Shown: positions 372-53,049 of the stretch, piece after piece
Layout of the letters: every line of letters starts with the position of its first letter
Numbering within the stretch: position 1 is the stretch's first letter
From: Octopus sinensis
Lineage: Eukaryota
Reading direction: 5' to 3'
Assembly (NCBI RefSeq): GCF_006345805.1
Contig: NW_021833764.1
Coordinates: forward strand, 12,487 to 76,486
DNA length: 64,000 nt
Made by a program: the position numbers and the translations under genes
The notes under the pieces: model-generated
Database searches by the model: none
Told to the model about the DNA's origin: nothing
The model's input: only the letters and a program-made list of their open reading frames with translations

Positions 372-378
372 TATATAT

Positions 379-773: not shown

Positions 774-781
774 TATATATA

Positions 782-1191: not shown

Positions 1192-1195
1192 TATA

Positions 1196-2327: not shown

Positions 2328-2347
2328 TATATATATATATATATAAT

Positions 2348-2861: not shown

Positions 2862-3003
2862 TGGTGTGTGTGTCTGTATATTTGTGTGCTTGTGTCCGTG
2901 TGTTAGCGTGTATACGTGTTCGTGTGTGTGTGGTCGTATGTGTGTGTGTGTGTGAGAGAGAGAGAGAGTTTCTTTGTGTGTGTTCGTGTGTGTGTGTGTG
3001 TGT
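2862..3003. repeat. Compound (GT)n/(GA)n microsatellite
   Basis: Direct reading. Confidence 0.9.
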
Positions 3004-3029
3004 ATGAGTTTTATAATTTTACTTGTTTC

Positions 3030-3171
3030 GTTCACGTTCCGAGTTCAAATTCCACTGAGGTCGACTTTGTCTTTCATCCATTTTGGTGGTACCAGTTGCG
3101 TACTGGGGCCGATGTAGTCAACTTACAACTCCTCCCCCTCCTCGAAACTGCTGTCCTTGTGACAAAATTTG
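3030..3171 (+). mobile_element. Diverged 5'-truncated SINE copy, sister subfamily of the satellite core
   Basis: GTTCCGAGTTCAAATTCCACTGAGGTCGACTTTGTCTTTCATCC...GTACCAGTTGCGTACTGGGGCCGATGTAGTCAACTT is colinear with the monomer core, then continues into a different tail (CCTCCCCCTCCTCGAAACTGCTGTCCTTGTGACAAAATTTG). Confidence 0.7.
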
Positions 3172-6100
3172 TTAAGTGAATGATTTTTTTAAATGAATTA
3201 TAAAATGTATTTCGTCTGCCGCTACGTTCTGAGTTCAAATTCCACCGAGGTCGACTTTGCCTTTCGTCCTTTCGGGGTCGATTAAATAAGTACCAGTTAC
3301 GCACTGGGGTCGATATAATCGACTTAAGTGAATGATTTTTTTAAATGAATTATAAAATGTATTTCGTCTGCCGCTACGTTCTGAGTTCAAATTCCACCGA
3401 GGTCGACTTTGCCTTTCGTCCTTTCGGGGTCGATTAAATAAGTACCAGTTACGCACTGGGGTCGATATAATCGACTTAAGTGAATGATTTTTTTAAATGA
3501 ATTATAAAATGTATTTCGTCTGCCGCTACGTTCTGAGTTCAAATTCCACCGAGGTCGACTTTGCCTTTCGTCCTTTCGGGGTCGATTAAATAAGTACCAG
3601 TTACGCACTGGGGTCGATATAAATGATTTAAGTGAATGATTTTTTTAAATGAATTATAAAATGTATTTCGTCTGCCGCTACGTTCTGAGTTCAAATTCCA
3701 CCGAGGTCGAATTTGCCTTTCGTCCTTTCGGGGTCGATTAAATAAGTACCAGTTACGCACTGGGGTCGATATAATCGATTTAAGTGAATGATTTTTTTAA
3801 ATGAATTATAAAATGTATTTCGTCTGCCGCTATGTTCTGAGTTCAAATTCCACCGAGGTCGACTTTGCCTTTCGTCCTTTCGGGGTCGATTAAATAAGTA
3901 CCAGTTACGCACTGGGGTCGATATATCGATTTAAGTGAATGATTTTTTTAAATGAATTATAAAATGTATTTCGTCTGCCGCTATGTTCTGAGTTCAAATT
4001 CCACCGAGGTTGACTTTGCCTTTCGTCCTTTCGGGGTCGATTAAATAAGTACCAGTTACGCACTGAGGTCGATATAATCGACTTAAGTGAATGATTTTTT
4101 AAAATGAATTATAAAATGTATTTCGTCTGCCGCTATGTTCTGAGTTCAAATTCAACCGAGGTCGACTTTGCCTTTCGTCCTTTCGGGGTCGATTAAATAA
4201 GTACCAGTTACGCACTGGGGTCGATATAATCGACTTAAGTGAATGATTTTTTTAAACGAATTATAAAATGTATTTCGTCTGCCGCTCTGTTCTGAGTTCA
4301 AATTCCACCGAGGTCGACTTTGCCTTTCGTCCTTTCGGGGTCGATTAAATAAGTACCATTTACGCACTGGGGTCGATATAATCGATTTAAGTGAATGATT
4401 TTTTTAAATGAATTATAAAATGTATTTCGTCTGCCGCTCTGTTCTGAGTTCAAATTCCACCGAGGTCGACTTTGCCTTTCGTCCTTTCGGGGTCGATTAA
4501 ATAAGTACCAGTTACGCACTGGGGTCGATATAATCGACTTAAGTGAATGATTTTTTTTAAATGAAATATAAAATGTATTTCGTCTGCCGCTACGTTCTGA
4601 GTTCAAATTCCACCGAGGTCGACTTTGCCTTTCGTCCTTTCGGGGTCGATTAAATAAGTACCAGTTACGCACTGGGTCGATATAATCGACTTAAGTGAAT
4701 GATTTTTTTAAATGAAATATAAAATGTATTTCGTCTGCCGCTACGTTCTGAGTTCAAATTCCACCGAGGTCGACTTTGCCTTTGGTCCTTTCGGGGTCGA
4801 TTAAATAAGTACCAGTTACGCACAGGTCGATAATCGACGACTTAAGTGAATGATTTTTTTAAATGAATTATAAAATGTATTTCGTCTGCCGCTACGTTCT
4901 GAGTTCAAATTCCACCGAGGTCGACTTTGCCTTTCGTCCTTTCGGGGTCGATTAAATAAGTACCAGTTACGCACTGGGGTCGATATAATCGACTTAAGAG
5001 AATGATTTTTTTTAATGAAATATAAAATGTATTTCGTCTGCCGCTACGTTCTGAGTTCAAATTCCACCGAGGTCGACTTTGCCTTTCGTCCTTTCGGGGT
5101 CGATTAAATAAGTACCAGTTACGCACTGGGTCGATATAATCGACTTAAGTGAATGATTTTTTTAAATGAATTATAAAATGTATTTCGTCTGCCGCTCTGT
5201 TCTGAGTTCAAATTCCACCGAGGTCGACTTTGCCTTTCGTCCTTTCGGGGTCGATTAAATAAGTACCAGTTACGCACTGGGGTCGATATAAATGATTTAA
5301 GTGAATGATTTTTTTAAATGAATTATAAAATGTATTTCGTCTGCCGCTACGTTCTGAGTTCAAATTCCACCGAGGTCGAATTTGCCTTTCGTCCTTTCGG
5401 GGTCGATTAAATAAGTACCAGTTACGCACTGGGGTCGATATAATCGATTTAAGTGAATGATTTTTTTAAATGAATTATAAAATGTATTTCGTCTGCCGCT
5501 ATGTTCTGAGTTCAAATTCCACCGAGGTCGACTTTGCCTTTCGTCCTTTCGGGGTCGATTAAATAAGTACCAGTTACGCACTGGGGTCGATATAATCGAT
5601 TTAAGTGAATGATTTTTTTAAATGAATTATAAAATGTATTTCGTCTGCCGCTATGTTCTGAGTTCAAATTCCACCGAGGTTGACTTTGCCTTTCGTCCTT
5701 TCGGGGTCGATTAAATAAGTACCAGTTACGCACTGAGGTCGATATAATCGACTTAAGTGAATGATTTTTTAAATGAATTATAAAATGTATTTCGTCTGCC
5801 GCTATGTTCTGAGTTCAAATTCAACCGAGGTCGACTTTGCCTTTCGTCCTTTCGGGGTCGATTAAATAAGTACCAGTTACGCACTGGGGTCGATATAATC
5901 GACTTAAGTGAATGATTTTTTTAAACGAATTATAAAATGTATTTCGTCTGCCGCTATGTTCTGAGTTCAAATTCAACCGAGGTCGACTTTGCCTTTCGTC
6001 CTTTCGGGGTCGATTAAATAAGTACCAGTTACGCACTGGGGTCGATATAATCGACTTAAGTGAATGATTTTTTTAAACGAATTATAAAATGTATTTCGTC

Positions 6101-18100: not shown

Positions 18101-21100
18101 GATTAAATAAGTACCAGTTACGCACTGGGGTCGATATAATCGACTTAGTGAATGATTTTTTAAATGAAATATAAAATGTATTTCGTCTGCCGCTACGTTC
18201 TGAGTTCAAATTCCACCGAGGTCGACTTGCCTTTCGTCGTTTCGGGGTCGATTAATAAGTACCAGTTACGCACTGGGGTCGATATAATCGACTTAAGTGA
18301 ATGATTTTTTAAATGAAATATAAAATGTATTTCGTCTGCCGCTACGTTCTGAGTTCAAATTCCACCGAGGTCGACTTGCCTTTCGTCCTTTCGGGGTCGA
18401 TTAAATAAGTACCAGTTACGCACTGGGGTCGATATAATCGACTTAAGTGAATGATTTTTTTAAATGAAATATAAAATGTATTTCGTCTGCGCTACGTTCT
18501 GAGTTCAAATTCCACCGAGGTCGACTTTGCCTTTCGTCCTTTCGGGGTCGATTAAATAAGTACCAGTTACGCACTGGGGTCGATATAATCGACTTAAGTG
18601 AATGATTTTTTTAAATGAATATAAAATGTATTTCGTCTGCCGCGACGTTCTGAGTTCAAATTCCACCGAGGTCGACTTTGCCTTTCGTCCTTTCGGGGTC
18701 GATTAATAAGTACCAGTTACGCACTGGGGTCGATATAATCGACTTAAGTGAATGATTTTTTTAAATGAAATATAAAATGTATTTCGTCTGCCGCTACGTT
18801 CTGAGTTCAAATTCCACCGAGGTCGACTTTGCCTTTCGTCCTTTCGGGGTCGATTAAATAAGTACAGTTACGCACTGGGGTCGATATAATCGACTTAAGT
18901 GAATGATTTTTTTAAATGATTATAAAATGTATTTCGTCTGCCGCTACGTTCTGAGTTCAAATTCCACCGAGGTCGACTTTGCCTTTCGTCCTTTCGGGGT
19001 CGATTAAATAAGTACCAGTTACGCACTGGGGTCGATATAATCGACTTAAGTGAATGATTTTTTAAATGAAATATAAAATGTATTTCGTCTGCCGCTACGT
19101 TCTGAGTTCAAATTCCACCAAGGTCGACTTTGCCTTTCGTCCTTTCGGGGTCGATAAATAAGTACCAGTTACGCACTGGGGTCGATATAATCGACTTAAG
19201 TGATGATTTTTTTAAATGAAATATAAAATGTATTCGTCTGCCGCTATGTTCTGAGTTCAAATTCCACCGAGGTCGACTTTGCCTTTCGTCCTTTCGGGGT
19301 CGATTAAATAAGTACCAGTTACGCACTGGGGTCGATATAATCGACTTAAGTGATGATTTTTTTAATGAATTATAAAATGTATTTCCTCTGCCGCTACGTT
19401 CTGAGTTCAAATTCCACCGAGGTCGACTTTGCCTTTCGTCCTTTCGGGGTCGATTAAATAAGTACCAGTTACGCACTGGGGTCGATATATCGACTTAAGT
19501 GAATGATTTTTTAAAATTAAATATAAAATGTATTTCGTCTGCCGCTATGTTCTGAGTTCAAATTCCACCGAGGTCGACTTTGCCTTTCGTCCTTTCGGGG
19601 TCGATTAAATAAGTACCAGTTACGCACTGGGGTCGATATAATCGACTTAAGTGAATGACTTTTTTAAATGAATTATAAAATGTATTTCGTCTGCCGCTAC
19701 GTTCTGAGTTCAAATTCCACCGAGGTCGACTTTGCCTTTCGTCCTTTCGGGGTCGATTAAATAAGTACCAGTTACGCACTGGGGTCGATATAATCGATTT
19801 AAGTGAATGATTTTTTTAAATGAATTATAAAATGTATTTCGTCTGCCGCTATGTTCTGAGTTCAAATTCCACCGAGGTCGACTTTGCCTTTCGTCCTTTC
19901 GGGGTCGATTAAATAAGTACCAGTTACGCACTGGGGTCGATATAATCGACTTAAGTGAATGATTTTTTAGATGAATTATAAAATGTATTTCGTCTGCCGC
20001 TATGTTCTGAGTTCAAATTCCACCGAGGTCGACTTTGCCTTTCGTCCTTTCGGGGTCGATTAAATAAGTACCAGTTACGCACTGGGGTCGATATAATCGA
20101 CTTAAGTGAATGATTTTTTTAAATGAAATATAATATGTATTTCGTCTGCCGCTACGTTCTGAGTTCAAATTCCACCGAGGTCGACTTTGCCTTTCGTCCT
20201 TTCGGGGTCGATTAAATAAGTACCAGTTACGCACTGGGGTCGATATAATCGACTTAAGTGAATGATTTTTTTAAATGAAATATAAAATGTATTTCGTCTG
20301 CCGCTACGTTCTGAGTTCAAATTCCACCGAGGTCGACTTTGCCTTTCGTCCTTTCGGGGTCGATTACATAAGTACCAGTTACGCACTGGGGTCGATATAA
20401 TCGACTTAAGTGAATGATTTTTTTAAATGAAATATAAAATGTATTTCGTCTGCCGCGACGTTCTGAGTTCAAATTCCACCGAGGTCGACTTTGCCTTTCG
20501 TCCTTTCGGGGTCGATTAAATAAGTAGCAGTTACGCACTGGGTCGATATAATCGACTTAAGTGAATGATTTTTTTAAATGAAATATAAAATGTATTTCGT
20601 CTGCCGCTACGTTCTGAGTTCAAATTCCACCGAGGTCGACTTTGCCTTTCGTCCTTTCGGGGTCGATTAAATAAGTACCAGTTACGCACTGGGGTCGATA
20701 TAATCGACTTAAGTGAATGATTTTTTTTAAATGAAATATAAAATGTATTTCGTCTGCCGCTACGTTCTGAGTTCAAATTCCACGAAGGTCGACTTTGCCT
20801 TTCGTCCTTTCGGGGTCGATTAAATAAGTACCAGTTACGCACTGGGGTCGATATAATCGACTTAAGTGAATGATTTTTTTAAATGAAATATAAAATGTAT
20901 TTCGTTTGCCGCTATGTTCTGAGTTCAAATTCCACCGAGGTCGACTTTGCCTTTCGTCCTTTCGGGGTCGTTTAAATAAGTACCAGTTACGCACTGGGGT
21001 CGATATAATCGACTTAAGTGAATGATTTTTTTAAATGAATTATAAAATGTATTTCGTCCGCCGCTACGTTCTGAGTTCAAATTCCACCGAGGTCGACTTT

Positions 21101-24100
21101 GCCTTTCGTCCTTTCGGGGTCGATTAAATAAGTACCAGTTACGCACTGGGGTCGATATAATCGACTTAAGTGAATGATTTTTTAAAATTAAATATAAAAT
21201 GTATTTCGTCTGCCGCTATGTTCTGAGTTCAAATTCCACCGAGGTCGACTTTGCCTTTCGTCCTTTCGGGGTCGATTAAATAAGTACCAGTTACGCACTG
21301 GGGTCGATATAATCGACTTAAGTGAATGACTTTTTTAAATGAATTATAAAATGTATTTCGTCTGCCGCTACGTTCTGAGTTCAAATTCCACCGAGGTCGA
21401 CTTGCCTTTCGTCCTTTCGGGGTCGATTAAATAAGTACCAGTTACGCACTGGGGTCGATATAATCGACTTAGGTGAATGATTTTTTAAAATGAATTATAA
21501 AATGTATTTCGTCTGCCGCTCTGTTCTGAGTTCAAATTCCACCGAGGTCGACTTTGCCTTTCGTCCTTTCGGGGTCGATTAAATAAGTACCAGTTACGCA
21601 CTGGGGTCGATATAATCGATTTAAGTGAATGATTTTTTAAAATGAATTATAAAATGTATTTCGTCGTCTGCCGCTATGTTCTGAGTTCAAATTCCACGAG
21701 GTCGACTTTGCCTTTCGTCCTTTCGGGGTCGATTAAATAAGTACAGTTACGCACTGGGGTCGATATAATCGACTTAAGTGAATGATTTTTTAAATGAAAT
21801 ATAAAATGTATTTCGTCTGCCGCTATGTTCTGAGTTCAAATTCCACCGAGGTCGACTTTGCCTTTTGTCCTTCGGGGTCGATTAAATAAGTACCAGTTAC
21901 GCACTGGGGTCGATATAATCGACTTAAGTGAATGATTTTTTTAAATGAAATATAAAATGTATTTCGTCTGCCGCTACGTTCTGAGTTCAAATTCCACCGA
22001 GGTCGACTTTGCCTTTCGTCCTTTCGGGGTCGATTAAATAAGTACCAGTTACGCACTGGGGTCGATATAATCGACTTAAGTGAATGATTTTTTAAATGAA
22101 ATATAAAATGTATTTCGTCTGCCGCTACGTTCTGAGTTCAAATTCCACCGAGGTCGACTTTGCCTTTCGTCCTTTCGGGGTCGATTAAATAAGTACCAGT
22201 TACGCACTGGGGTCGATATAATCGACTTAAGTGAATGATTTTTTAAATGAAATATAAAATGTATTCGTCTGCCGCTATGTTCTGAGTTTAAATTCCACCG
22301 AGGTCGACTTTGCGTTTCGTCCTTCGGGGTCGATTAAATAAGTACCAGTTACGCACTGGGTCGATATAATCGACTTAAGTGAATGATTTTTTTAATGAAT
22401 TATAAAATGTATTTCGTCTGCCGCTACGTTCTGAGTTCAAATTCCACCGAGGTCGACTTTGCCTTTCGTCCTTTCGGGGTCGATTAAATAAGTACCAGTT
22501 ACGCACTGGGGTCGATATAATCGACTTAAGTGAATGATTTTTTTAATGAATTATAAAATGTATTTCGTCTGCCGCTACGTTCTGAGTTCAAATTCCACCG
22601 AGGTCGACTTTGCCTTTCGTCCTTTCGGGGTCGATTAAATAAGTACCAGTTACGCACTGGGGTCGATATAATCGACTTAAGTGAATGATTTTTTTAAATG
22701 AAATATAAAATGTTCGTCTGCCGCTACGTTCTGAGTTCAAATTCCACCAGGTCGACTTTGCCTTTCGTCCTTTCGGGGTCGATTAAATAAGTACCAGTTA
22801 CGCACTGGGGTCGATATAATCGACTTAAGTGAATGATTTTTTAAATGAAATATAAAATGTATTTCGTCTGCCGCTATGTTCTGAGTTCAAATTCCACCGA
22901 GGTCGACTTTGCCTTCGTCCTTTCGGGGTCGATTAAATAAGTACCAGTTACGCACTGGGGTCGATATAATCGACTTAAGTGAATGATTTTTTAAATGAAT
23001 TATAAAATGTATTTCCTGCCGCTACGTTCTGAGTTCAATTCCACCGAGGTCGACTTTGCCTTTCGTCCTTTCGGGGTCGATTAAATAAGTACCAGTTACG
23101 CACTGGGGTCGATATAATCGACTTAAGTGAATGATTTTTTAAAATTAAATATAAAATGTATTTCGTCTGCCGCTATGTTCTGAGTTCAAATTCCACCGAG
23201 GTCGACTTTGCCTTTCGTCCTTTCGGGGTCGATTAAATAAGTACCAGTTACGCACTGGGGTCGATATAATCGACTTAAGTGAATGATTTTTTAAATGAAT
23301 TATAAAATGTATTTCGTCTGCCGCTACGTTCTGGGTTCAAATTCCACCGAGGTCGACTTGCCTTTCGTCCTTTCGGGGTCGATTAAATAAGTACCAGTTA
23401 CGCACTGGGTCGATATAATCGATTAAGTGAATGATTTTTTAAATGAAATATAAAATGTATTTCGTCTGCCGCTATGTTCTGAGTTCAAATTCCACCGAGG
23501 TCGACTTTGCCTTTCGTCCTTTCGGGGTCGATTAAATAAGTACCAGTTACGCACTGGGGTCGATATAATCGACTTAAGTGAATGATTTTTAGATGAATAT
23601 AAAATGTATTTCGTCTGCCGCTATGTTCTGAGTTCAAATTCCACCGAGTCGACTTTGCCTTTCGTCCTTTCGGGGTCGATTAAATAAGTACCAGTTACGC
23701 ACTGGGGTCGATATAATCGACTTAAGTGAATGATTTTTTAAATGAAATATAATATGTATTTCGTCTGCCGCTACGTTCTGAGTTCAAATTCCACCGAGGT
23801 CGACTTTGCCTTTCGTCCTTTCGGGGTCGATTAATAAGTACCAGTTACGCACTGGGGTCGATAATCGACTTAAGTGAATGATTTTTTTAAATGAAATATA
23901 AAATGTATTTCGTCTGCCGCTACGTTCTGAGTTCAAATTCCACCGAGGTCGACTTTGCCTTTCGTCCTTTCGGGGTCGATTAAATAAGTACCAGTTACGC
24001 ACTGGGGTCGATATAATCGACTTAAGTGAAATTTTTTTTTTAAATGAAATATAAAATGTATTTCGTCTGCCGCGACGTTCTGAGTTCAAATTCACCGAGG

Positions 24101-27100
24101 TCGACTTTGCCTTTCGTCCTTTCGGGGTCGATTAAATAAGTAGCAGTTACGCACGGGTCGATATAATCGACTTAAGTGAATGATTTTTTAAATGAAATAT
24201 AAATGTATTTCGTCTGCCGCTACGTTCTGAGTTCAAATTCCACCGAGGTCGACTTTGCCTTTCGTCCTTTCGGGGTCGATTAAATAAGTACCAGTTACGC
24301 ACTGGGGTATATAATCGACTTAAGTGAATGATTTTTTTAAATGAAATATAAAATGTATTTCGTCTGCCGCTACGTTCTGAGTTCAAATTCCACGAAGGTC
24401 GACTTTGCCTTTCTGTCGTCTTTCGGGTCGATTAAATAAGTACCAGTTACGCACTGGGGTCGATATAATCGACTTAAGTGAATGATTTTTTTAAATGAAT
24501 ATAAAATGTATTTCGTTTGCCGCTATGTTCTGATTCAAATTCCACCGAGGTCGACTTTGCCTTTCGTCCTTTCGGGGTCGTTTAAATAAGTACCAGTTAC
24601 GCACTGGGGTCGATATAATCGACTTAAGTGAATGATTTTTTAAATGAATTATAAAATGTATTTCGTCGCCGCCGCTACGTTCTGAGTTCAATTCCACCGA
24701 GGTCGACTTTGCCTTTCGTCCTTTCGGGGTCGATTAAATAAGTACCAGTTACGCACTGGGTCGATATAATCGACTTAAGTGAATGATTTTTTAAAATTAA
24801 ATATAAAATGTATTTCGTCTGCCGCTATGTTCTGATTCAAATTCCACCGAGGTCGACTTTGCCTTTCGTCCTTTCGGGGTCGATTAAATAAGTACCAGTT
24901 ACGCACTGGGGTCGATATAATCGACTTAAGTGAATGACTTTTTTAAATGAAATTATAATGTATTTCGTCTGCCGCTACGTTCTGAGTTCAAATTCCACCG
25001 AGGTCGACTTGCCTTTCGTCTTCGGGGTCGATTAAATAAGTACCAGTTACGCACTGGGGTCGATATAATCGACTTAGGTGAATGATTTTTTAAATGAATT
25101 ATAAAATGTATTTCGTCTGCCGCTCTGTTCTGAGTTCAAATTCCACCGAGGTCGACTTTGCCTTTCGTCCTTTCGGGGTCGATTAAATAAGTACCAGACG
25201 CACTGGGGGGACGATAATCGATTTAAGTGAATGATTTTTTAAATGAATTATAAAATATTTCGTCTGCCGCTATGTTCTGAGTTCAAATTCCACCGAGGTC
25301 GACTTTGCCTTTCGTCCTTTCGGGGTCGATTAAATAAGTACCAGTTACGCACTGGGGTCGATATAATCGACTTAAGTGAATGATTTTTTAAATGAATTAT
25401 AAAATGTATTTCGTCTGCCGCTATGTTCTGAGTTCAAATTCCACCGAGGTCGACTTTGCCTTTTGTCCTTTCGGGGTCGATTAAATAAGTACCAGTTACG
25501 CACTGGGGTCGATATAATCGACTTAAGTGAATGATTTTTTTTAATGAATTATAAAATGTATTTCGTCTGCCGCTACGTTCTGAGTTCAAATTCCACCGAG
25601 GTCGACTTTGCCTTTCGTCCTTTCGGGGTCGATTAAATAAGTACCAGTTACGCACTGGGGTCGATATAATCGACTTAAGTGAATGATTTTTTTAAATAAA
25701 ATATAAAATGTATTTCGTCTGCCGCTACGTTCTGAGTTCAAATTCCACCGAGGTCGACTTTGCCTTTCGTCCTTTCGGGGTCGATTAAATATGTACCAGT
25801 TACGCACTGGGGTCGATATAATCGACTTAAGTGAATGATTTTTTTAAATGAAATATAAAATGTATTCCGTCTGCCGCTATGTTCTGAGTTTAAATTCCAC
25901 CGAGGTCGACTTTGCGTTTCGTCCTTTCGGGGTCGATTAAATAAGTACCAGTTACGCACTGGGGTCGATATAATCGACTTAAGTGAATGGTTTTTTTAAA
26001 TGAATTATAAAATGTATTTCGTCTGCCGCTACGTTCTGAGTTCAAATTCCACCGAGGTCGACTTTGACTTTCGTCCTTTCGGGGTCGATTAAATAAGTAC
26101 CAGTTACGCACTGGGGTCGATATAATCGACTTAAGTGAATGATTTTTTTAAATGAATTATAAAATGTATTTCGTCTGCCGCTACGTTCTGAGTTCAAATT
26201 CCACCGAGGTCGACTTTGCCTTTCGTCCTTTCGGGGTCGATTAAATAAGTACCAGTTACGCACTGGGGTCGATATAATCGACTTAAGTGAATGATTTTTT
26301 TTAAATGAAATATAAAATGTATTTCGTCTGCCGCTACGTTCTGAGTTCAAATTCCACCAAGGTCGACTTTGCCTTTCGTCCTTTCGGGGTCGATTAAATA
26401 AGTACCAGTTACGCACTGGGGTCGATATAATCGACTTAAGTGAATGATTTTTTTAAATGAAATATAAAATGTATTTCGTCTGCCGCTATGTTCTGAGTTC
26501 AAATTCCACCGAGGTCGACTTTGCCTTTCGTCCTTTCGGGGTCGATTAAATAAGTACCAGTTACGCACTGGGGTCGATATAATCGACTTAAGTGAATGAT
26601 TTTTTTAAATGAATTATAAAATGTACTTCCTCTGCCGCTACGTTCTGAGTTCAAATTCCACCGAGGTCGACTTTGCCTTTCGTCCTTTCGGGGTCGATTA
26701 AATAAGTACCAGTTACGCACTGGGGTCGATATAATCGACTTAAGTGAATGATTTTTAAAATTAAATATAAAATGTATTTCGTCTGCCGCTATGTTCTCAG
26801 TTCAAATTCCACCGAGGTCGACTTTGCCTTTCGTCCTTTCGGGGTCGATTAAATAAGTACCAGTTACGCACTGGGGTCGATATAATCGACTTAAGTGAAT
26901 GACTTTTTTAAATGAATTATAAAATGTATTTCGTCTGCCGCTACGTTCTGAGTTCAAATTCCACCGAGGTCGACTTTGCCTTTCGTCCTTTCGGGGTCGA
27001 TAAATAAGTACCAGTTACGCACTGGGGTCGATATAATCGATTTAAGTGAATGATTTTTTAAAATGAATTATAAAATGTATTTCGTCTGCCGCTATGTTCT

Positions 27101-30100
27101 GAGTTCAAATTCCACCGAGGTCGACTTTGCCTTTCGTCCTTTCGGGGTCGATTAAATAAGTACCAGTTACGCACTGGGGTCGATATAATCGACTTAAGTG
27201 AATGATTTTTTTAAATGAATATTAAAATGTATTTCGTCTGCCGCTATGTTCTGAGTTCAAATTCCACCGAGGTCGACTTGCCTTTCGTCCTTTCGGGGTC
27301 GATTAAATAAGTACCAGTTACGCACTGGGGTCGATATAATCGACTTAAGTGAATGATTTTTTTAATGAAATATAAAATGTATTTCGTCTGCCGCTACGTT
27401 CTGAGTTCAAGTTCAAATTCCACCGAGGTCGACTTTGCCTTTCGTCCTTTCGGGGTCGATTAAATAAGTACCAGTTACGCACTGGGGTCGATATAATCGA
27501 CTTAAGTGAATGATTTTTTTAAATGAAATATAAAATGTATTTCGTCTGCCGCTACGTTCTGAGTTCAAATTCCACCGAGGTCGACTTTGCCTTTCGTCCT
27601 TTCGGGGTCGATTAAATAAGTACCAGTTACGCACTGGGGTCGATATAATCGACTTAAGTGAATGATTTTTTTAAATGAAATATAAAATGTATTTCGTCTG
27701 CCGCGACGTTCTGAGTTCAAATTCCACCGAGGTCGACTTTGCCTTTCGTCCTTTCGGGGTCGATTAAATAAGTAGCAGTACGACCTGGGTCGATATAATC
27801 GACTTAAGTGAATGATTTTTTAAATGAAATATAAAATGTATTTCGTCTGCCGCTACGTTCTGAGTTCAAATTCCACCGAGGTCGACTTTGCCTTTCGTCC
27901 TTTCGGGGTCGATTAAATAAGTACCAGTTACGCACTGGGGTCGATATAATCGACTTAAGTGAATGATTTTTTTTAAATGAATATAAAATGTATTTCGTCT
28001 GCCGCTACGTTCTGAGTTCAAATTCCACGAAGGTCGACTTTGCCTTTCGTCCTTTCGGGGTCGATTAAATAAGTACCAGTTACGCACTGGGGTCGATATA
28101 ATCGACTTAAGTGAATGATTTTTTTAAATGAAATATAAAATGTATTTCGTTTGCCGCTATGTTCTGAGTTCAAATTCCACCGAGGTCGACTTTGCCTTTC
28201 GTCCTTTCGGGGTCGATTAAATAAGTACCAGTTACGCACTGGGGTCGATATAATCGACTTAAGTGAATGATTTTTTTAAATGAATTATAAAATGTATTTC
28301 GTCCGCCGCTACGTTCTGAGTTCAAATTCCACCGAGGTCGACTTTGCCTTTCGTCCTTTCGGGGGCGATTAAATAAGTACCAGTTACGCACTGGGGTCGA
28401 TATAATCGACTTAAGTGAATGATTTTTTAAAATTAAATATAAAATGTATTTCGTCTGCCGCTATGTTCTGAGTTCAAATTCCACCGAGGTCGACTTTGCC
28501 TTTCGTCCTTTCGGGGTCGATTAAATAAGTACCAGTTACGCACTGGGGTCGATATAATCGACTTAAGTGAATGACTTTTTTAAATGAATTATAAAATGTA
28601 TTTCGTCTGCCGCTACGTTCTGAGTTCAAATTCCACCGAGGTCGACTTGCCTTTCGTCCTTTCGGGGTCGATTAAATAAGTACCAGTTACGCACTGGGGT
28701 CGATATAATCGACTTAAGTGAATGATTTTTTTAAATGAATTATAAAATGTATTTCGTCTGCCGCTCTGTTCTGAGTTCAAATTCCACCGAGGTCGACTTT
28801 GCCTTTCGTCCTTTCGGGGTCGATTAAATAAGTACCAGTTACGCACTGGGGTCGATATAATCGATTTAAGTGAATGATTTTTTAAAATGAATTATAAAAT
28901 GTATTTCGTCTGCCGCTATGTTCTGAGTTCAAATTCCACCGAGGTCGACTTTGCCTTTCGTCCTTTCGGGGTCGATTAAATAAGTACCAGTTACGCACTG
29001 GGGTCGATATAATCGACTTAAGTGAATGATTTTTTAAAATGAATTATAAAATGTATTTCGTCTGCCGCTATGTTCTGAGTTCAAATTCCACCGAGGTCGA
29101 CTTTGCCTTTTGTCCTTTCGGGGTCGATTAAATAAGTACCAGTTACGCACTGGGGTCGATATAATCGACTTAAGTGAATGATTTTTTTTAATGAATTATA
29201 AAATGTATTTCGTCTGCCGCTACGTTCTGAGTTCAAATTCCACCGAGGTCGACTTTGCCTTTCGTCCTTTCGGGGTCGATTAAATAAGTACCAGTTACGC
29301 ACTGGGGTCGATATAATCGACTTAAGTGAATGATTTTTTTAAATAAATATAAAATGTATTTCGTCTGCCGCTACGTTCTGAGTTCAAATTCCACCGAGGT
29401 CGACTTTGCCTTTCGTCCTTTCGGGGTCGATTAAATATGTACCAGTTACGCACTGGGGTCGATATAATCGACTTAAGTGAATGATTTTTTTAAATGAAAT
29501 ATAAAATGTATTTCGTCTGCCGCTATGTTCTGAGTTTAAATCCACCGAGGTCGACTTTGCGTTTCGTCCTTTCGGGGTCGATTAAATAAGTACCAGTTAC
29601 GCACTGGGGTCGATATAATCGACTTAAGTGAATGATTTTTTTAAATGAATTATAAAATGTATTTCGTCTGCCGCTACGTTCTGAGTTCAAATTCCACCGA
29701 GGTCGACTTGCCTTTCGTCCTTTCGGGGTCGATTAATAAGTACCAGTTACGCACTGGGGTCGATATAATCGACTTAAGTGAATGATCTTTTAAAATGAAA
29801 TATAAAATGTATTTCGTCTGCCGCTACGTTCTGAGTTCAAATTCCACCGAGGTCGACTTGCCTTTCGTTCTTTCGGGGTCGATTAAATAAGTACCAGTTA
29901 CGCACTGTGGTCGATATAATCGACTTAAGTGAATGATTTTTTAAAATGAATTATAAAATGTATTTCGTCTGCCGCTCTGTTCTAAGTTCAAATTCCACCG
30001 AGGTCGACTTTGCCTTTCGTCCTTTCGGGGTCGATTAAATAAGTACCAGTTACGCACTGTGGTCGATATAATCGATTTAAGTGAATGATTTTTTAAAATG

Positions 30101-33100
30101 AATTATAAAATGTATTTCGTCTGCCGCTATGTTCTGAGTTCAAATTCCACCGAGGTCGACTTTGCCTTTCGTCCTTTCGGGGTCGATTAAATAAGTACCA
30201 GTTACGCACTGGGGTCGATATAATCGACTTAAGTGAATGATTTTTTTAAATGAAATATAAAATGTATTTCGTCTGCCGCTATGTTCTGAGTTCAATTCCA
30301 CCGAGGTCGACTTTGCCTTTCGTCCTTTCGGGGTCGATTAAATAAGTACCAGTTACGCACTGGGGTCGATATAATCGACTTAAGTGAATGATTTTTTTTA
30401 ATGAATTATAAAATGTATTTCGTCTGCCGCTACGTTCTGAGTTCAAATTCCACCGAGGTCGACTTTGCCTTTCGTCCTTTCGGGGTCGATTAAATAAGTA
30501 CCAGTTACGCACTGGGGTCGATATAATCGACTTAAGTGAATGATTTTTTTAAAATGAATATAAAATGTATTTCGTCTGCCGCTACGTTCTGAGTTCAAAT
30601 TCCACCGAGGTCGACTTTGCCTTTCGTCCTTTCGGGGTCGATTAAATAAGTACCAGTTACGCACTGGGGTCGATATAATCGACTTAAGTGAATGATTTTT
30701 TTAAATGAAATATAAAATGTATTTCGTCTGCCGCTATGTTCTGAGTTTAAATTCCACCGAGGTCGACTTTGCGTTTCGTCCTTTCGGGGTCGATTAAATA
30801 AGTACCAGTTACGCACTGGGGTCGATATAATCGACTTAAGTGAATGATTTTTTTAAATGAATTATAAAATGTATTTCGTCTGCCGCTACGTTCTGAGTTC
30901 AAATTCCACCGAGGTCGACTTTGCCTTTCGTCCTTTCGGGGTCGATTAAATAAGTACCAGTTACGCACTGGGGTCGATATAATCGACTTAAGTGAATGAT
31001 TTTTTAAAATGAAATATAAAATGTATTTCGTCTGCCGCTACGTTCTGAGTTCAAATTCCACCGAGGTCGACTTGCCTTTCGTTCTTTCGGGGTCGATTAA
31101 ATAAGTACCAGTTACGCACTGGGGTCGATATAATCGACTTAAGTGAATGATTTTTTAAAATGAATTATAAAATGTATTTCGTCTGCCGCTCTGTTCTAAG
31201 TTCAAATTCCACCGAGGTCGACTTTGCCTTTCGTCCTTTCGGGGTCGATTAAATAAGTACCAGTTACGCACTGGGGTCGATATAATCGATTTAAGTGAAT
31301 GATTTTTTAAAATGAATTATAAAATGTATTTCGTCTGCCGCTATGTTCTGAGTTCAAATTCCACCGAGGTCGACTTTGCCTTTCGTCCTTTCGGGGTCGA
31401 TTAAATAAGTACCAGTTACGCACTGGGGTCGATATAATCGACTTAAGTGAATGATTTTTTTTAAATGAATTAAAATGTATTCGTCTGCCGCTATGTTCTG
31501 AGTTCAAATTCCACCGAGGTCGACTTTGCCTTTTGTCCTTTCGGGGTCGATTAAATAAGTACCAGTTACGCACTGGGGTCGATATAATCGACTTAAGTGA
31601 ATGATTTTTTAAAATGAAATATAAAATGTATTTCGTCTGCCGCTACGTTCTGAGTTCAAATTCCACCGAGGTCGACTTTGCCTTTCGTCCTTTCGGGGTC
31701 GATTAAATAAGTACCAGTTACGCACTGGGGTCGATATAATCGACTTAAGTGAATGATTTTTTTAAATGAAATATAAAATGTATTTCGTCTGCCGCTACGT
31801 TCTGAGTTCAAATTCCACCGAGGTCGACTTTGCCTTTCGTCCTTTCGGGGTCGATTAAATAAGTACCAGTTACGCACTGGGGTCGATATAATCGACATAA
31901 GTGAATGATTTTTTTAAATGAAATATAAAATGTATTTCGTCTGCCGCTACGTTCTGAGTTCAAATTCCACCGAGGTCGACTTTGCCTTTCGTCCTTTCGG
32001 GGTCGATTAAATAAGTACCAGTTACGCATGGGGGTCGATATAATCGACTTAAGTGAATGATTTTTTAAAATGAATTATAAAATGTATTTCGTCTGCCGCT
32101 ATGTTCTGAGTTCAAATTCCACCGAGGTCGACTTTGCCTTTTGTCCTTTCGGGGTCGATTAAATAAGTACCAGTTACGCACTGGGGTCGATATAATCGAC
32201 TTAAGTGAATGATTTTTTAAAATGAATATAAAATGTATTTCGTCTGCCGCTACGTTCTGAGTTCAAATTCCACCGAGGTCGACTTTGCCTTTCGTCCTTT
32301 CGGGGTCGATTAAATAAGTACCAGTTACGCACTGGGTCGATATAATCGACTTAAGTGAATGATTTTTTTAAATGAAATATAAAATGTATTTCGTCTGCCG
32401 CTACGTTCTGAGTTCAAATTCCACCGAGGTCGACTTTGCCTTTCGTCCTTTCGGGGTCGATTAAATAAGTACCAGTTACGCACTGGGTCGATATAATCGA
32501 CTTAAGTGAATGATTTTTTTAAATGAATTATAAAATGTATTTCGTCTGCCGCTACGTTCTGAGTTCAAATTCACACCGAGGTCGACTTTGCCTTTCGTCC
32601 TTTCGGGGTCGATTAAATAAGTACCAGTTACACTGGTGTCGATATAATCGACTTAAGTGAATGATTTTTTTAAATGAAATATAAAATGTATTTCGTCTGC
32701 CGCTACGTTCTGAGTTCAAATTCCACCGAGGTCGACTTTGCCTTTCGTCCTTTCGGGGTCGATTAAATAAGTACCAGTTACGCACTGGGTCGATATAATC
32801 GACTTAAGTGAATGATTTTTTTTAAATGAAATATAAAATGTATTTCGTCTCCCGCTACGTTCTGAGTTCAAATTCCACCGAGGTCGACTTTGCCTTTCGT
32901 CCTTTCGGGGTCGATTAAATAAGTACCAGTTACGCACTGGGGTCGATATAATCGACTTAAGTGAATGATTTTTTTAAATAAATTATAAAATGTATTTCGT
33001 CTGCCGCTACGTTCTGAGTTCAAATTCCACCGAGGTCGACTTTGCCTTTCGTCCTTTCGGGGTCGATTAAATAAGTACCAGTTACGCACTGGGGTCGATA

Positions 33101-36017
33101 TAATCGACTTAAGTGAATGATTTTTTAAAATGAATTATAAAATGTATTTCGTCTGCCGCTATGTTCTGAGTTCAAATTCCACCGAGGTCGACTTTGCCTT
33201 TTGTCCTTTCGGGGTCGATTAAATAAGTACCAGTTACGCACTGGGTCGATATAATCGACTTAAGTGAATGATTTTTTTAAATGAAATATAAAATGTATTT
33301 CGTCTGCCGCTACGTCTGAGTTCAAATTCCACCGAGGTCGACTTTGCCTTTCGTCCTTCGGGGTCGATTAAATAAGTACCAGTTACGCACTGGGGTCGAT
33401 ATAATCGACTTAAGTGAATGATTTTTTAAAATGAAATATAAAATGTTAGTCTGCCGCTACGTTCTGAGTTCAAATTCCACCGAGGTCGACTTTGCCTTTC
33501 GTCCTTTCGGGGTCGATTAAATAAGTACCAGTTACGCACTGGGGTCGATATAATCGACATAAGTGAATGATTTTTTTAAATGAAATATAAAATGTATTTC
33601 GTCTGCCGCTACGTTCTGAGTTCAAATTCCACCGAGGTCGACTTTGCCTTTCGTCCTTTCGGGGTCGATTAAATAAGTACCAGTTACGCACTGGGGTCGA
33701 TATAATCGACTTAAGTGAATGATTTTTTAAAATGAATATAAAATGTATTTCGTCTGCCGCTACGTTCTGAGTTCAAATTCCACCGAGGTCGACTTTGCCT
33801 TTCGTCCTTTCGGGGTCGATTAATAAGTACCAGTTACGCACTGGGGTCGATACAATCGACTTAAGTGAATGATTTTTTTAAATGAATTATAAAATGTATT
33901 TCGTCTGCCGCTACGTTCTGAGTTCAAATTCCACCGAGGTCGACTTGCCTTTCGTCCTCGGGGGTCGATTAAATAAGTACCAGTTACGCACTGGTGTCGA
34001 ATAATCGACTTAAGTGAATGATTTTTTTAAATGAAATATAAAATGTATTTCGTCTGCCGCTACGTTCTGAGTTCAAATTCCACCGAGGTCGACTTTGCCT
34101 TTCGTCCTTTCGGGGTCGATTAAATAAGTACCAGTTACGCACTGGGTCGATATAATCGACTTAAGTGAATGATTTTTTTAAATGAAATATAAAATGTCTT
34201 TCGTCTGCCGCTACGTTCTGAGTTCAAATTCCACCGAGTCGGTCGACTTTGCCTTTCGTCCTTTCGGGGTCGATTAAATAAGTACCAGTTACGCACTGGG
34301 GTCGATATAATCGACTTAAGTGAATGATTTTTTTAAATGAATTATAAAATGTATTTCGTCTGCCGCTACGTTCTGAGTTCAAATTCCACCGAGGTCGACT
34401 TTGCCTTCGTCCTTTCGGGGTCGATTAAATAAGTACCAGTTACGCACTGGTTGTCGATATAATCGACTTAAGTGAATGATTTTTTTAAATGAAATATAAA
34501 TGTATTTCGTCTGCCGCTACGTTCTGAGTTCAAATTCCACCGAGGTCGACTTTGCCTTTCGTCCTTTCGGGGTCGATTAAATAAGTACCAGTTACGCACT
34601 GGGGTCGATATAATCGACTTAAGTGAATGATTTTTTAAATGAAATAAAAATGTATTTCGTCTGCCGCTATGTTCTGAGTTCAAATTCCACCGAGGTCGAC
34701 TTTGCCTTTCGTCCTTTCGGGGTCGATTAAATAAGTACCAGTTACGCACTGGGGTCGATATAATCGACTTAAGTGAATGATTTTTTTAAAATGAATATAA
34801 AATGTATTTCGTCTGCCGCTACGTTCTGAGTTCAAATTCCACCGAGGTCGACTTTGCCTTTCGTCCTTTCGGGGTCGATAAATAAGTACCAGTTACGCAC
34901 TGGGGTCGATATAATCGACTTAAGTGAATGATTTTTTTAAAATGAAATATAAAATGTATTTCGTCTGCCGCTACGTTCTGAGTTCAAATTCCACCGAGGT
35001 CGACTTTGCCTTTCGTCCTTTCGGGGTCGATTAAATAAGTACCAGTTACGCACTGCGGTCGATATAATAACGACTTAAGTGAATGATTTTTTTAATGAAA
35101 TATAAAATGTATTTGTCTGCCGCTATGTTTTGAGTTCAAATTCCACCGAGGTCGACTTTGCCTTTCGTCCTTTCGGGGTCGATTAAATAAGTACCAGTTA
35201 CGCACTGGGGTCGATATAATCGACTTAAGTGAATGATTTTTTAAATGAATTATAAAATGTATTTCGTCTGCCGCTACGTTCTGAGTTCAAATTCCACCGA
35301 TGTCGACTTTGCCTTTCGTCCTTTCGGGGTCGATTAAATAAGTACCAGTTACGCACTGGGGTCGATATAATCGACTTAAGTGAATGATTTTTTAAATGAA
35401 TTATAAAATGTATTTCGTCTGCCGCTACGTTCTGAGTTCAAATTCCACCGAGGTCGACTTTGCCTTTCGTCCTTTCGGGGTCGATTAAATAAGTACCAGT
35501 TACGCACTGGGGTCGATATAATCGACTTAAGTGAATGATTTTTTTAATGAATTATAAAATGTATTTCGTCTGCCGCTACGTTCTGAGTTCAAATTCCACG
35601 AGGGTCGACTTTGCCTTTCGTCCTTTCGGGGTCGATTAAATAAGTACCAGTTACGCACTGGTGTCGATATAATCGACTTAAGTGAATGATTTTTTTAAAT
35701 GAATTATAAAATGTATTTCGTCTGCCGCTACGTTCTGAGTTCAAATTCCACCGAGGTCGACTTTGCCTTTCGTCCTTTCGGGGTCGATTAAATAAGTACC
35801 AGTTACGCACTGGGGTCGATATAATCGATTTAAGTGAATGATTTTTTTAAATGAAATATAAAATGTATTTCGTCTGCCGCTATGTTCTGAGTTCAAATTC
35901 CACCGAGGTCGACTTTGCCTTTCGTCCTTTCGGGGTCGATTAAATAAGTACCAGTTACGCACTGGGGTCGATATAATCGACTTAAGTGAATGATTTTTTA
36001 AGTGAATTATAAAATGT
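3172..36017 (+). repeat. 152-bp SINE-derived tandem satellite, ~216 head-to-tail monomers
   Basis: Monomer 3174-3325: AAGTGAATGATTTTTTTAAATGAATTATAAAATGT + ATTTCGTCTGCCGCTACGTTCTGAGTTCAAATTCCACCGAGGTCGACTTTGCCTTTCGTCCTTTCGGGGTCGATTAAATAAGTACCAGTTACGCACTGGGGTCGATATAATCGACTT. (35984-3174)/152 is about 216. One orientation throughout; I saw no interrupting insertion. Confidence 0.97.
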
Positions 36018-36704
36018 GCCAACAAATGATGAATGAGTGAATTGATGAATGTGAGTTTAAAATGAAGGAGTGAAAAGAATATTGGAATGGATAAATGATT
36101 GAATAACGAAGGAATTATCCATTGAAAGAAGGAATGAACAATGAAGGAATGGGATGGATGAATGAAGTGAAGAAAGAATGAGAGGCTGAATGAATGGATG
36201 AATGAATGAATGCACGAGAGGATGGGTGGGTGAATGAATGAATGAACGAGGAAATGGATGAATGAATGAATCGACTGAAGAATGAATTTATGAAAAGGTG
36301 AATGAGTGAATGAACGAATGCATGACTGAATCAAAGAAAAAACGAACGAAAGAACGAGGAATGAATGAATGAACGAAGGGGTAGATAAATGAAAGATTTA
36401 ATGAATGAATGAAGGGACGAGGGAATCGATGAAGGAATGGGATAGATGAATGAAGTGAAGAAAGAATGAGAGGCTGAATGAACGAATAAGCTAATGCATG
36501 AATGAAAACGAATTAATGAAGGAATAAATGTAAAACGCAGAATGAAATGAAGGAATGAAAGGGAAAAAATGAAGGAATGAATGAAGAGGTGACTGAACGA
36601 GTTGATAAATCAATGAATGAAAAGGAAGAAATGAATCGACGAACGAAGATCGAATGGACAAATGAATGGAAAACAAAAACAGGGACGAAGAAAGAAAATG
36701 AAGA
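36018..36704 (+). repeat. Degenerate GAAT-rich left flank containing a ~288-bp repeat unit
   Basis: ATGAAGGAATGGGAT(G/A)GATGAATGAAGTGAAGAAAGAATGAGAGGCTGAATG recurs at 36141 and 36429. Confidence 0.85.
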
Positions 36705-48090: not shown

Positions 48091-48990
48091 AAAGAAAGAA
48101 ACAATCAACGATTGATTGATTGAACAGATGGATGAACAAGTTTATAAATGAATGAGTGAATGAATGAACTAAAATAAATTGATAAACATGCGGATGAATG
48201 AATAAAATGATGAAGAAGTAAACGAATGAATTTATAGATGAATGAAGAGTAAATGGATAGACGAACAAAATAATGAATAAGCTGATGGAAGGATGAATGA
48301 ATGAATGAACGAAAGAGCAAAAGAATGAAAATGGAGAAATGAATGAATTAGTAAACGAGTGAACGAGCGAATGAACAAATGGACAAAAGGATGAATGAAA
48401 GAATCGACTGAAGAATGAATTTGAGAAAAGGTGAATGAATGAGTGAATGAACGAATGTATGACTGAATCAGAGAAAAAACGAACGAAAGAACGAGGGATG
48501 AATGAATGAATGAACGAAGGGGTAGATAAATGAACGATTTAATGAATGAATGAATGAATGAAAGGACGCGGGAATCGATGAAGGAATGGGATGGATGAAT
48601 GAAGTGAAGAATGAATGAGAGGCTGAATGAATGGATGAATGAATGAATGAATGCACGAGAGAATGGATGGGTGAATGAATGAATGAACGAGAGGATGGGT
48701 GGGTGAATGAATGAATGAATGAACGAGGAAATGGATGAATGAATCGAATCAATCAAGGAACGAACCAATGTATCAATAAATGGATGGATGGTTAGAATGA
48801 TTAGCGAACGAGCGACTGGACGGATGAATGATCTAATATACATGAATGAATGTGCGAGTGAATCAATAAACAAACACAAGAATGAAAAATGAAGAAATGA
48901 ATTATGAATGAACGAGTGATTAGATGAATCATTTAGTGAAGGAATAATTGGAGACGTAGAAAAGGCAGAGAGAAACGGAGAACATTGAAT
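48091..48990 (+). repeat. Degenerate GAAT-rich right flank containing a permuted copy of the ~288-bp unit
   Basis: 48401-48746 repeats blocks seen at 36141-36480 (GAATCGACTGAAGAATGAATTT...GGGGTAGATAAATGA...GAGAGGCTGAATGAATGGATG...GCACGAGAG). Confidence 0.85.
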
Positions 48991-53048: not shown

Positions 53049-53049
53049 T

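What the first reader, a model, noticed from the sequence alone, without database searches (positions are those of the whole stretch)
3172..36017. 33-kb satellite born from the internal core of a tRNA-derived SINE
Seen: ~216 uninterrupted head-to-tail 152-bp monomers. 117 bp of each is colinear with the dispersed SINE remnant at 3030-3171 and shares GAT(A/T)AAATAAGTAC and GGGGTCGAT motifs with the SINE family at 54705 and 61559. The monomer lacks both the SINE head and tail. Knowledge: TE-derived satellites occur in plants and animals, and ~150-bp monomers are nucleosome-sized. Inference: a SINE-core satellite that amplified locally and may be undescribed for this genome.
Basis: partly seen in the sequence, partly recalled or inferred. 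Interest (0 to 1): 0.8.

Follow-up and report, generated by a model that had tools for sequence, protein, structure and literature searches.

The report
Octopus satellite built from SINE fragment
A 33-kb block of about 217 head-to-tail 152-bp repeats in an octopus-type genome, each unit made of a 121-bp internal piece of an abundant short retrotransposon (SINE) plus a 31-bp AT-rich spacer: a clean but not unprecedented case of a mobile-element fragment turned into satellite DNA.

Summary
Positions 3172-36017 hold 217 complete monomers and one 40-bp partial monomer of 152 bp. The array is uninterrupted and averages 97% identity to its consensus.

About 121 bp of each monomer matches positions 47-167 of a high-copy dispersed SINE ("SINE-B", my label). 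I recovered that SINE from Octopus bimaculoides DNA, where it gave 14 hits in 62 kb. The remaining 31 bp is a non-SINE spacer.

- The monomer keeps the 3' half of the SINE head, including its B-box-like motif. It lacks only the first ~46 nt and the tail.
- The parent is not the SINE family at 54705/61559, which shares only a weak ~80-bp similarity.
- The remnant at 3030-3176 is an older, separate copy.
- tRNA ancestry could not be confirmed with Rfam or ARAGORN.

Both array ends lie in the spacer, giving the layout spacer-(core-spacer)x217. Multi-monomer blocks are duplicated inside the array (3 kb at 98.5% against 95-96% in controls). This points to growth by unequal exchange.

SINE-derived satellites are already documented in squamates, and tandem SINE arrays in bivalves. 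I found no paper describing one in an octopus. Verdict: new member of a known kind, moderate interest. Genome-wide abundance, chromosomal location and read support could not be tested.

The parts
3172..36017 (+). 152-bp satellite array: 217 full monomers plus a terminal 40-bp partial unit. Layout is spacer-(SINE core-spacer)x217.
   Evidence: TRF; segmentation and alignment
3176..3206 (+). Non-SINE spacer of the first monomer (GTGAATGATTTTTTTAAATGAATTATAAAAT). It recurs in every unit at monomer positions 5-35.
   Evidence: SINE homology stops at ...CGACTTAA and restarts at GTATTTCG. The spacer does not align to SINE tails. Its first 8-mer GTGAATGA is the core word of the neighbouring 16-bp satellite: 596 copies there, 0 in the other 18 kb.
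3207..3327 (+). SINE-derived core of the first monomer (monomer positions 36-152 plus the next TTAA). It equals SINE-B positions ~47-167.
   Evidence: blastn to O. bimaculoides locus L001 and to Logan/ENA contigs, up to 93% identity; alignments
3232..3242 (+). B-box-like motif AGTTCAAATTC (9 of 11 positions of GGTTCGANNCC) in the first monomer. It is intact in 193 of 217 monomers.
   Evidence: Read from the sequence; counted. It ranks 37 of 152 among 11-mers, so it is not specially conserved.
3030..3176 (+). Older 5'-truncated SINE-B-like copy of a different tail subfamily. It sits in a (GT)n tract and its 3' end abuts the first monomer.
   Evidence: blastn at 75% identity; tail alignment to L001 54731-54888
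35978..36017 (+). Terminal partial unit (CGACTTAA plus spacer). The array ends inside the spacer, with no SINE tail following.
19042..22071 (+). 20-monomer block duplicated 48 monomers downstream at 26279-29317.
   Evidence: 98.5% identity against 95.3-96.5% for control blocks; lag analysis
26279..29317 (+). Second copy of the duplicated 20-monomer block.
36123..48790 (+). Adjacent simple satellite, (TGAATGAA)n / (AATGAGTGAATGAGCG)n. It is context and a possible source of the first 8 bp of the spacer.
   Evidence: TRF; GC skew about 0.7; k-mer counts

Best explanation
This is a satellite DNA array in an octopod genome. Its 152-bp unit is a composite of two parts. One is a 121-bp internal fragment of a young copy of an abundant dispersed SINE, running from the middle of the head (with its B-box-like motif) through the body to ...ATCGACTTAA. 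The other is a 31-bp AT-rich non-SINE spacer.

Shown: the homology, the shared truncation points in every unit, the direction SINE to satellite, and the internal block duplications.

Inferred: one such composite segment was duplicated in tandem. It then expanded to about 217 copies by repeated unequal crossing-over or replication slippage involving single units and multi-unit blocks of 8, 11, 24 and 48 units. Ongoing homogenisation keeps monomers about 97% like the consensus. The array has no coding capacity and most likely behaves as a neutral or heterochromatic block. Because it lacks the A-box half of the promoter, the monomer is unlikely to be an autonomous Pol III unit.
For: The array and its homogeneity are established.

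Translating an array ORF hits only O. bimaculoides and unnamed Logan/ENA proteins, and only over the SINE-coded third of the query.

In 62 kb of O. bimaculoides chromosome CM046612.1 the monomer gives 12 hits, all to monomer positions 36-152 and up to 93% identical. The full-length element of about 217 bp gives 14 hits there, with a head, a body and at least 3 tail types.

All 217 monomers match the same interval, SINE-B 47/49-166/167, at 87-90.5% identity.

The monomer carries the diagnostic bases of one subfamily (GATTAAATAAG, ACGCACTG), which are also seen in L001 33676-33784.

The spacer is not alignable to SINE tails.

Block duplication: 98.5% identity against 95-96% in controls. Mean differences at informative sites are 1.25 against a background of 6.8. 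Periodicities are seen at lags 8, 11, 24 and 48.

The consensus is CpG-rich (observed/expected 1.86) with only modest CpG decay, and the monomer consensus differs from its closest subfamily copies at only a few sites. Both are consistent with a young array.

The literature shows that the process is known elsewhere (PMC10702118, PMC11481361).
Against: Neither end of the array carries the parent SINE's head or tail. Most squamate SINE-derived satellites do have such a terminal unit (PMC10702118). So birth at this exact site is not demonstrated, and the ends may have been remodelled or the array imported.

The origin of the spacer is unresolved. The whole spacer shows no similarity to the flank beyond composition. 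Only the 8-mer GTGAATGA links it to the neighbouring satellite, with a rough chance estimate of 0.01-0.02, which is my own estimate.

Copy number and part of the indel variation cannot be checked without reads. One T of the T7 run is missing in 46 of 217 units, and there are 310 deleted bases against 621 substitutions. Some of this may be long-read consensus error.

Genome-wide distribution, chromatin state and any function are untested.
Confidence: 0.85

Rival explanations
1. The array, or its seed, was not born here. It arose elsewhere in the genome and was inserted or seeded at this site, for example through extrachromosomal circular DNA, rolling-circle amplification or ectopic recombination between satellite loci. 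It then continued to expand.
For: Both ends fall in the spacer at an arbitrary phase (217.26 units), with no SINE head or tail in either flank. The whole spacer shows no significant similarity to local flanks.
Against: The spacer begins with GTGAATGA, the dominant 8-mer of the directly adjacent 16-bp satellite, which is absent from the other 18 kb. The layout R-(U-R)n is what unequal exchange between flanking direct repeats produces in situ (described for bivalve SINE arrays, PMC11481361).
Confidence: 0.3
2. The array is a multimer of independent SINE retrotranspositions into the same site (tail-targeted tandem insertions), not an amplified DNA segment.
For: SINE-B copies do pile up head-to-tail. 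L001 58990-59615 holds three adjacent copies that are 96%, 84% and 74% identical to the consensus. The older remnant directly abuts the array.
Against: All 217 units share identical 5' and 3' truncation points, lack both tail and head start, and carry the same 31-bp spacer. Independent insertions would differ in truncation, tails and target-site duplications.
Confidence: 0.02
3. The direction is reversed: the dispersed SINE family acquired its body from this satellite.
For: Homology alone does not give a direction.
Against: The shared segment starts inside the SINE head and runs across the head/body boundary. Dispersed copies span 74-96% identity to their consensus and occur in O. bimaculoides and other samples, whereas the array is homogeneous and nests within one subfamily.
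Confidence: 0.03
4. The length of the array is an assembly artefact: a short tandem repeat over-expanded, or a longer one collapsed.
For: Read support cannot be checked here. Homopolymer-length variation in the T7 run suggests a noisy long-read consensus.
Against: There are 194 distinct monomers of 217. Variation is structured, with block duplications and regional differences in divergence. No exact repeat exceeds 396 bp. Artefactual expansion would give identical copies.
Confidence: 0.07

Closest known systems
SINE-derived satellites (sSats) of squamate reptiles (Vassetzky, Kosushkin & Ryskov 2023, PMC10702118)
   Same: Tandem repeats made from a portion of a dispersed SINE with a Pol III-type head. 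Loci reach about 1000 units. Longer loci are more homogeneous, which is interpreted as duplication, then amplification, then concerted evolution.
   Different: Most squamate loci have a longer terminal unit that reaches a SINE terminus. This array has none at either end. This monomer also carries 31 bp of non-SINE spacer, and the host is a cephalopod mollusc.
Tandem SINE arrays TSD-(SINE-TSD)n in bivalves, especially Scapharca broughtonii (PMC11481361)
   Same: The host is a mollusc. The formal layout R-(U-R)n is the same, and it is attributed to unequal homologous recombination between flanking direct repeats.
   Different: Those arrays are made of full-length SINEs with 4-15 units. Here the unit is an internally truncated fragment lacking the head start and the tail, and there are about 217 units.
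tRNA-like Pol III tandem families of amphibians (PolIII/TAN of newt, Xenopus OAX/satellite I, Rana/polIII, Hy/polIII), as reviewed in PMC10702118
   Same: They are tandem repeats containing tRNA-like or Pol III promoter-like sequence.
   Different: No parent SINE is known for them (the cited authors call the SINE link inconclusive). Here the parent SINE is demonstrable, but tRNA likeness is not, and the unit has only the B-box side of the promoter.
Octopus CORE-SINEs OR1/OR2 (Ohshima & Okada 1994, as cited in PMC4758252, PMC4824008 and PMC5804259)
   Same: They are dispersed octopus SINEs. The family at 54705/61559 has a best local match to the CORE hallmark CCTTGGGCAAGT.
   Different: I could not obtain the OR1 or OR2 sequences.

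Membership tests
Satellite DNA | Long array of head-to-tail monomers with high mutual similarity | tested here: met
   217.2 copies, 95% matches; 97% identity to consensus
Satellite DNA | Multiple or large loci genome-wide, with heterochromatic (centromeric or subtelomeric) location | not testable with these tools
   No access to the host assembly, reads or cytology. No hit for the junction 23-mer in metagenome or prokaryote collections, which are uninformative here.
SINE-derived satellite | Monomer homologous to part of a dispersed SINE that itself has a head, body and tail | tested here: met
SINE-derived satellite | Terminal unit extending to a SINE terminus (common in squamate sSats, not obligatory) | tested here: not met
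   Both ends lie in the spacer. The left neighbour is a different, older SINE copy.
tRNA-derived SINE (the parent element SINE-B) | 5' head recognisably related to a tRNA | tested here: inconclusive
   No Rfam tRNA hit at E<=10 on a 93% copy or on the monomers. ARAGORN finds nothing at 100-80% thresholds. The ARAGORN call at the 70% threshold is not informative, because at that setting every test sequence got a call.
tRNA-derived SINE (the parent element SINE-B) | Internal Pol III A and B boxes | tested here: inconclusive
   The B-box-like AGTTCAAATTC matches 9 of 11 positions, and the A-box region GAGCTGGCAGA is only weakly consensus-like. Both were read from the alignment. No transcription data are available.
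tRNA-derived SINE (the parent element SINE-B) | Short, high-copy, dispersed, with variable 3' tails | tested here: met
   14 hits in 62 kb of O. bimaculoides, plus copies in three other samples, with at least 3 tail types
CORE-SINE superfamily (parent element) | Presence of the conserved CORE domain | tested here: inconclusive
No curated CORE profile was available.
Tandem multimer of independent SINE insertions | Each unit is a separate insertion with its own head, tail and target-site duplication | tested here: not met
   Truncation points and spacer are identical in all units.

The most novel reading that the evidence does not exclude
The array may be more than inert DNA. It places about 190-200 intact B-box-like TFIIIC-type sites at nucleosome-length spacing. 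It could act like a giant cluster of 'extra TFIIIC' sites, serving as a chromatin boundary, a condensin-loading site or a nuclear-positioning element. Alternatively, it could be one locus of a major, lineage-specific octopod satellite with a centromeric or sex-chromosome role. Either reading would make it the first functional SINE-derived satellite described in a cephalopod.
Probability: 0.07. Interest if true: 0.7.

Novelty: new member of a known kind. Interest (0 to 1): 0.4.

Why it matters
Well-documented SINE-to-satellite transitions are few. The 2023 squamate study judged earlier examples inconclusive (PMC10702118). This is a clear case from a distant phylum, with the parent element, the exact breakpoints and a composite monomer all visible.

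It also has a practical consequence for octopus genomics. SINEs are reported to make up 11.6% of the genome, and 'TE hotspots' are called per 100-kb window (PMC13282606). A 33-kb array like this would be masked as more than 200 SINE fragments. That would inflate SINE counts and age landscapes and could create a spurious hotspot.

If the monomer proves abundant genome-wide, it would be a candidate cytogenetic marker (FISH, or a SalI/DraI/AflII ladder) for octopod chromosomes. I found no satellite DNA described for octopods in the held literature.

Tried and rejected
1. Rfam scans, at gathering threshold on the whole window and at E<=10 on 2990-3640, 54690-55120 and L001 5880-6160, gave no tRNA or other credible family.
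2. ARAGORN on the window and L001, and on consensus heads with relaxed thresholds, gave nothing for SINE-B down to 80%. At 70% everything is called, so that result is not informative.
3. Strict-scoring alignment of the monomer against the 54705/61559 SINEs was not significant. Permissive scoring gave a modest colinear match.
5. The spacer does not align to SINE-B tails, so it is not a deleted tail. The whole spacer shows nothing beyond composition against the right flank, the neighbouring satellite or control regions.
6. The monomer folded as single-stranded DNA is no more stable than shuffles (z=-0.86). Only short dyads such as GTCGAT/ATCGAC are present.
7. The B-box-like 11-mer is not more conserved than other 11-mers.
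8. Scans for the junction 23-mer in metagenome and prokaryote genome collections gave 0 hits.
9. I tried to identify the source assembly through exact look-up of window ORFs. None is on record (P0003 likewise).
10. Text searches for sequence strings in papers gave nothing relevant. Gilbert & Labuda 1999 is not held.
11. Array edges are not more diverged than the centre. The most divergent monomers are about 40-100, so a simple 'old edges, young centre' model does not fit.
Full report
**1. Observation**

Tandem Repeats Finder reports one array at 3172-36017 with period 152, 217.2 copies, 95% matches and score 59405. I segmented it independently with a fuzzy anchor. That gave 218 starts with spacings of 146-159 bp, so nothing interrupts the array.

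A MAFFT alignment gives a 152-bp consensus. Monomers average 97.2% identity to it, with a minimum of 90.8%. Mean pairwise identity between monomers is about 94.5%.

There are 194 distinct monomer sequences among 217, and the longest exact internal repeat is 396 bp. The consensus has one site each for SalI, DraI, AflII and RsaI. SalI occurs 200 times in the array.

**2. What the monomer is made of**

Within the window, the only significant match outside the array is 3034-3122, at 75% identity and E 7e-16.

To reach related DNA I translated an array ORF (4298-4672, minus strand) and searched the protein collection. All six hits cover only about a third of the query. Three are 'uncharacterized proteins' of Octopus bimaculoides and the others are unnamed ENA or Logan ORFs.

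The gene for the best hit sits in a 62-kb stretch of O. bimaculoides chromosome CM046612.1 (locus L001). In that stretch:
- The monomer has 12 BLAST hits, all confined to monomer positions 36-152 and up to 93% identical.
- Aligning these copies with their flanks reveals a dispersed element of about 217 bp, which I call SINE-B. It has a head starting GGCGGCGAGCTGGCAGAA, a B-box-like GAGTTCAAATTCC, a body (...TTTCGGGGTCGATAAATTAAGTACCAGTTACGTACTGGGGTCGATCTAATCGACT) and at least three alternative tails.
- The full element gives 14 hits in L001 and further hits in contigs from three other samples.

Every monomer in the array matches the same interval, SINE-B positions 47/49 to 166/167, at 87-90.5% identity. 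The homology ends at ...ATCGACTTAA. The next 31 bp (GTGAATGATTTTTTTAAATGAATTATAAAAT) do not align to any SINE-B tail.

So the unit is a 121-bp SINE fragment plus a 31-bp spacer. The fragment carries the diagnostic bases of one subfamily (GATTAAATAAG, ACGCACTG), as in L001 33676-33784.

**3.

- *Head.* The monomer is not headless. It begins in the middle of the head and keeps the B-box-like AGTTCAAATTC, which matches 9 of 11 positions of GGTTCGANNCC and is intact in 193 of 217 units. It lacks the first ~46 nt and the whole tail.
- *Remnant.* The remnant at 3030-~3176 is a separate, older, 5'-truncated copy of another tail subfamily. Its tail...CTGCTGTCCTTGTGACAAAATTTG, aligns with L001 54731-54888. 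It is less like the monomer (75%) than O. bimaculoides copies are (87-93%), so it is not the progenitor.
- *The 54705/61559 family.* This is a different SINE ("SINE-A"), with 7 copies or fragments in the window and about a dozen in L001. BLAST sees only an 11-mer in common with the monomer, and strict alignment is not significant. A permissive local alignment gives an ~80-bp colinear match (GTC.ACTT.GC..TTCG...CGAT..AATAAGTAC...TTAC...GGGGTCGA...TCGA.TTAA). It scores z=5.7 (0 of 1000 dinucleotide shuffles) for the 54705 copy and z=3.2 (15 of 1000) for the 61559 copy. That suggests a distantly shared body module, not parentage.
- *tRNA origin.* It could not be confirmed for SINE-B. The literature says octopus SINEs OK, OR1 and OR2 are tRNA-derived, and that OR1 or OR2 (the cited papers differ on which) belongs to the CORE-SINEs (PMC4758252, PMC4824008, PMC5804259). 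I could not obtain those sequences.

**4. Anatomy of the ends**

The array starts with a spacer immediately after the 3' end of the older SINE copy (…AAAATTTG|TTAAGTGAATGA…). It ends inside a spacer (…AATTATAAAATGT|GCCAACAAATGATGAATGAG…), which runs into a degenerate and then regular (TGAATGAA)n / (AATGAGTGAATGAGCG)n satellite at 36123-48790.

The layout is therefore spacer-(core-spacer)x217, with neither the head nor the tail of the parent SINE at either side. This differs from most squamate SINE-derived satellites, which retain a terminal unit reaching a SINE end (PMC10702118). It formally resembles the TSD-(SINE-TSD)n arrays of bivalves, which are attributed to unequal recombination between flanking direct repeats (PMC11481361).

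The spacer's first 8-mer, GTGAATGA, is the dominant word of the adjacent 16-bp satellite: 596 occurrences there and none in the remaining 18 kb. The spacer as a whole has no similarity to the flank beyond composition. Birth in situ at the edge of the simple satellite is therefore plausible but unproven. Import of a seed array from elsewhere remains a live alternative.

**5. How it grew**

Divergence is not highest at the edges. Monomers ~40-100 are the most diverged, and the right half is the most homogeneous.

Informative-site distances reveal multi-monomer periodicities at lags 8, 11, 24 and 48. The clearest case is monomers 106-125 (19042-22071) against 154-173 (26279-29317). These are 98.5% identical over 3 kb, against 95.3-96.5% for control block pairs. 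This is the signature of unequal exchange involving blocks of units.

The consensus is CpG-rich, with 11 CpG and observed/expected 1.86. CpG transitions are about 2.7 times more frequent per site than other C/G transitions. One CpG>TpG variant is present in about 40% of units. Together with the small distance between the monomer consensus and its closest SINE-B subfamily copies, this points to a relatively young array.

One caveat applies. The T7 run is one T short in 46 units, and indels are frequent (310 deleted bases against 621 substitutions). Part of the variation may be long-read consensus error.

**6. Function**

Nothing indicates a coding or structured-RNA role:
- ORFs are short and repeat-derived.
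- There is no Rfam family match.
- The single-strand fold is no better than shuffles (z=-0.86).
- The B-box-like motif is not preferentially conserved.

The most likely status is neutral or heterochromatic satellite DNA. The 152-bp period is nucleosome-sized, but that is only a correlation. The speculative alternative, an array of TFIIIC-type sites with a chromatin role, is not excluded, and I give it a low probability.

**7. Host**

The SINE families, the protein hits and a third shared repeat (93.7% identity to L001) place the window in an octopod related to O. bimaculoides. I could not identify the species.

**8. Novelty**

TE-derived satellites, including SINE-derived ones, are an established category (PMC10702118, PMC12692304), and tandem SINE arrays occur in molluscs (PMC11481361).

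No paper in the held library describes satellite DNA, or a SINE-derived satellite, in an octopus. The O. vulgaris genome paper and the 2026 repeat re-annotation do not mention satellites.

I therefore rate it a new member of a known kind, of moderate interest. Its practical relevance is to SINE and TE-hotspot annotation in octopus genomes.

Noticed in passing
window 36123-48790: A 12.7-kb simple satellite with period 8 (TGAATGAA) and 16 (AATGAGTGAATGAGCG, about 717 copies at 88% matches). It is strongly strand-asymmetric (GC skew about 0.7, few C on the + strand) and directly abuts the 152-bp array. Two unrelated satellites sit side by side.
   Followed up: partly
window 8-1208 (and ~2200-2330, minus strand): A 401-bp tandem repeat of 3 copies at 94% matches, cut off by the window start, so it may be the edge of another array. 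A related piece lies at about 2200-2330 on the minus strand. It has no match in the O. bimaculoides locus.
   Followed up: partly
window 2446-2474 (minus strand): A perfect 29/29 match to the first 29 nt of the SINE-B head (GGCGGCGAGCTGGCAGAAACGTTAGCACG), followed by unrelated sequence and a (TA)n tract. It could be another element sharing the same head, or a truncated or recombined copy.
   Followed up: partly
window 54403-54420: A short interstitial telomere-like (TTAGGG)3 just upstream of a SINE-A copy.
   Followed up: no
window 56453-57074 (minus strand): ORF fragments with reverse-transcriptase motifs (…LLFADDIKL…), indicating a LINE remnant. It was not classified and is a possible partner of the local SINEs.
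   Followed up: no
window 49123-49257(-), 51628-52026(-), 54704-55098(+), 55940-56097(+), 61559-61970(+), 62030-62193(+), 63822-64000(+): Seven copies or fragments of the ~400-bp SINE-A family, which has an internal TG/TA microsatellite. They are 71-93.5% identical to the 61559 copy, and the best O. bimaculoides copies reach 88%. Its best local match to MIR is the CORE hallmark CCTTGGGCAAGT, but the match is not statistically significant.
   Followed up: partly
L001 58990-59615 (minus strand): Three SINE-B copies of different ages (96%, 84% and 74% identical to the consensus) lie directly head-to-tail in O. bimaculoides. This suggests that new copies tend to insert at the ends of older ones, the same arrangement seen for the old remnant next to the array in the window.
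   Followed up: partly
window 3172-36017, monomer position ~17 (T7 run): One T of the T7 run is missing in 46 of 217 monomers, and indels are unusually common relative to substitutions. This may reflect homopolymer errors of a long-read assembly rather than biology.
   Followed up: no
window 52808-53558 and 49-61 kb generally: A very long (TTA)~250 tract and dense TA, AC and ACAT microsatellites flank the satellites. GC content falls to 24-29% in places. The whole window is repeat-dominated, and I saw no convincing host gene.
   Followed up: no
window 55359-55579, 58625-58827, 63285-63484: A third dispersed repeat family of about 220 bp is shared with L001 13778-14009 at 83-94% identity. It was not characterised.
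   Followed up: no
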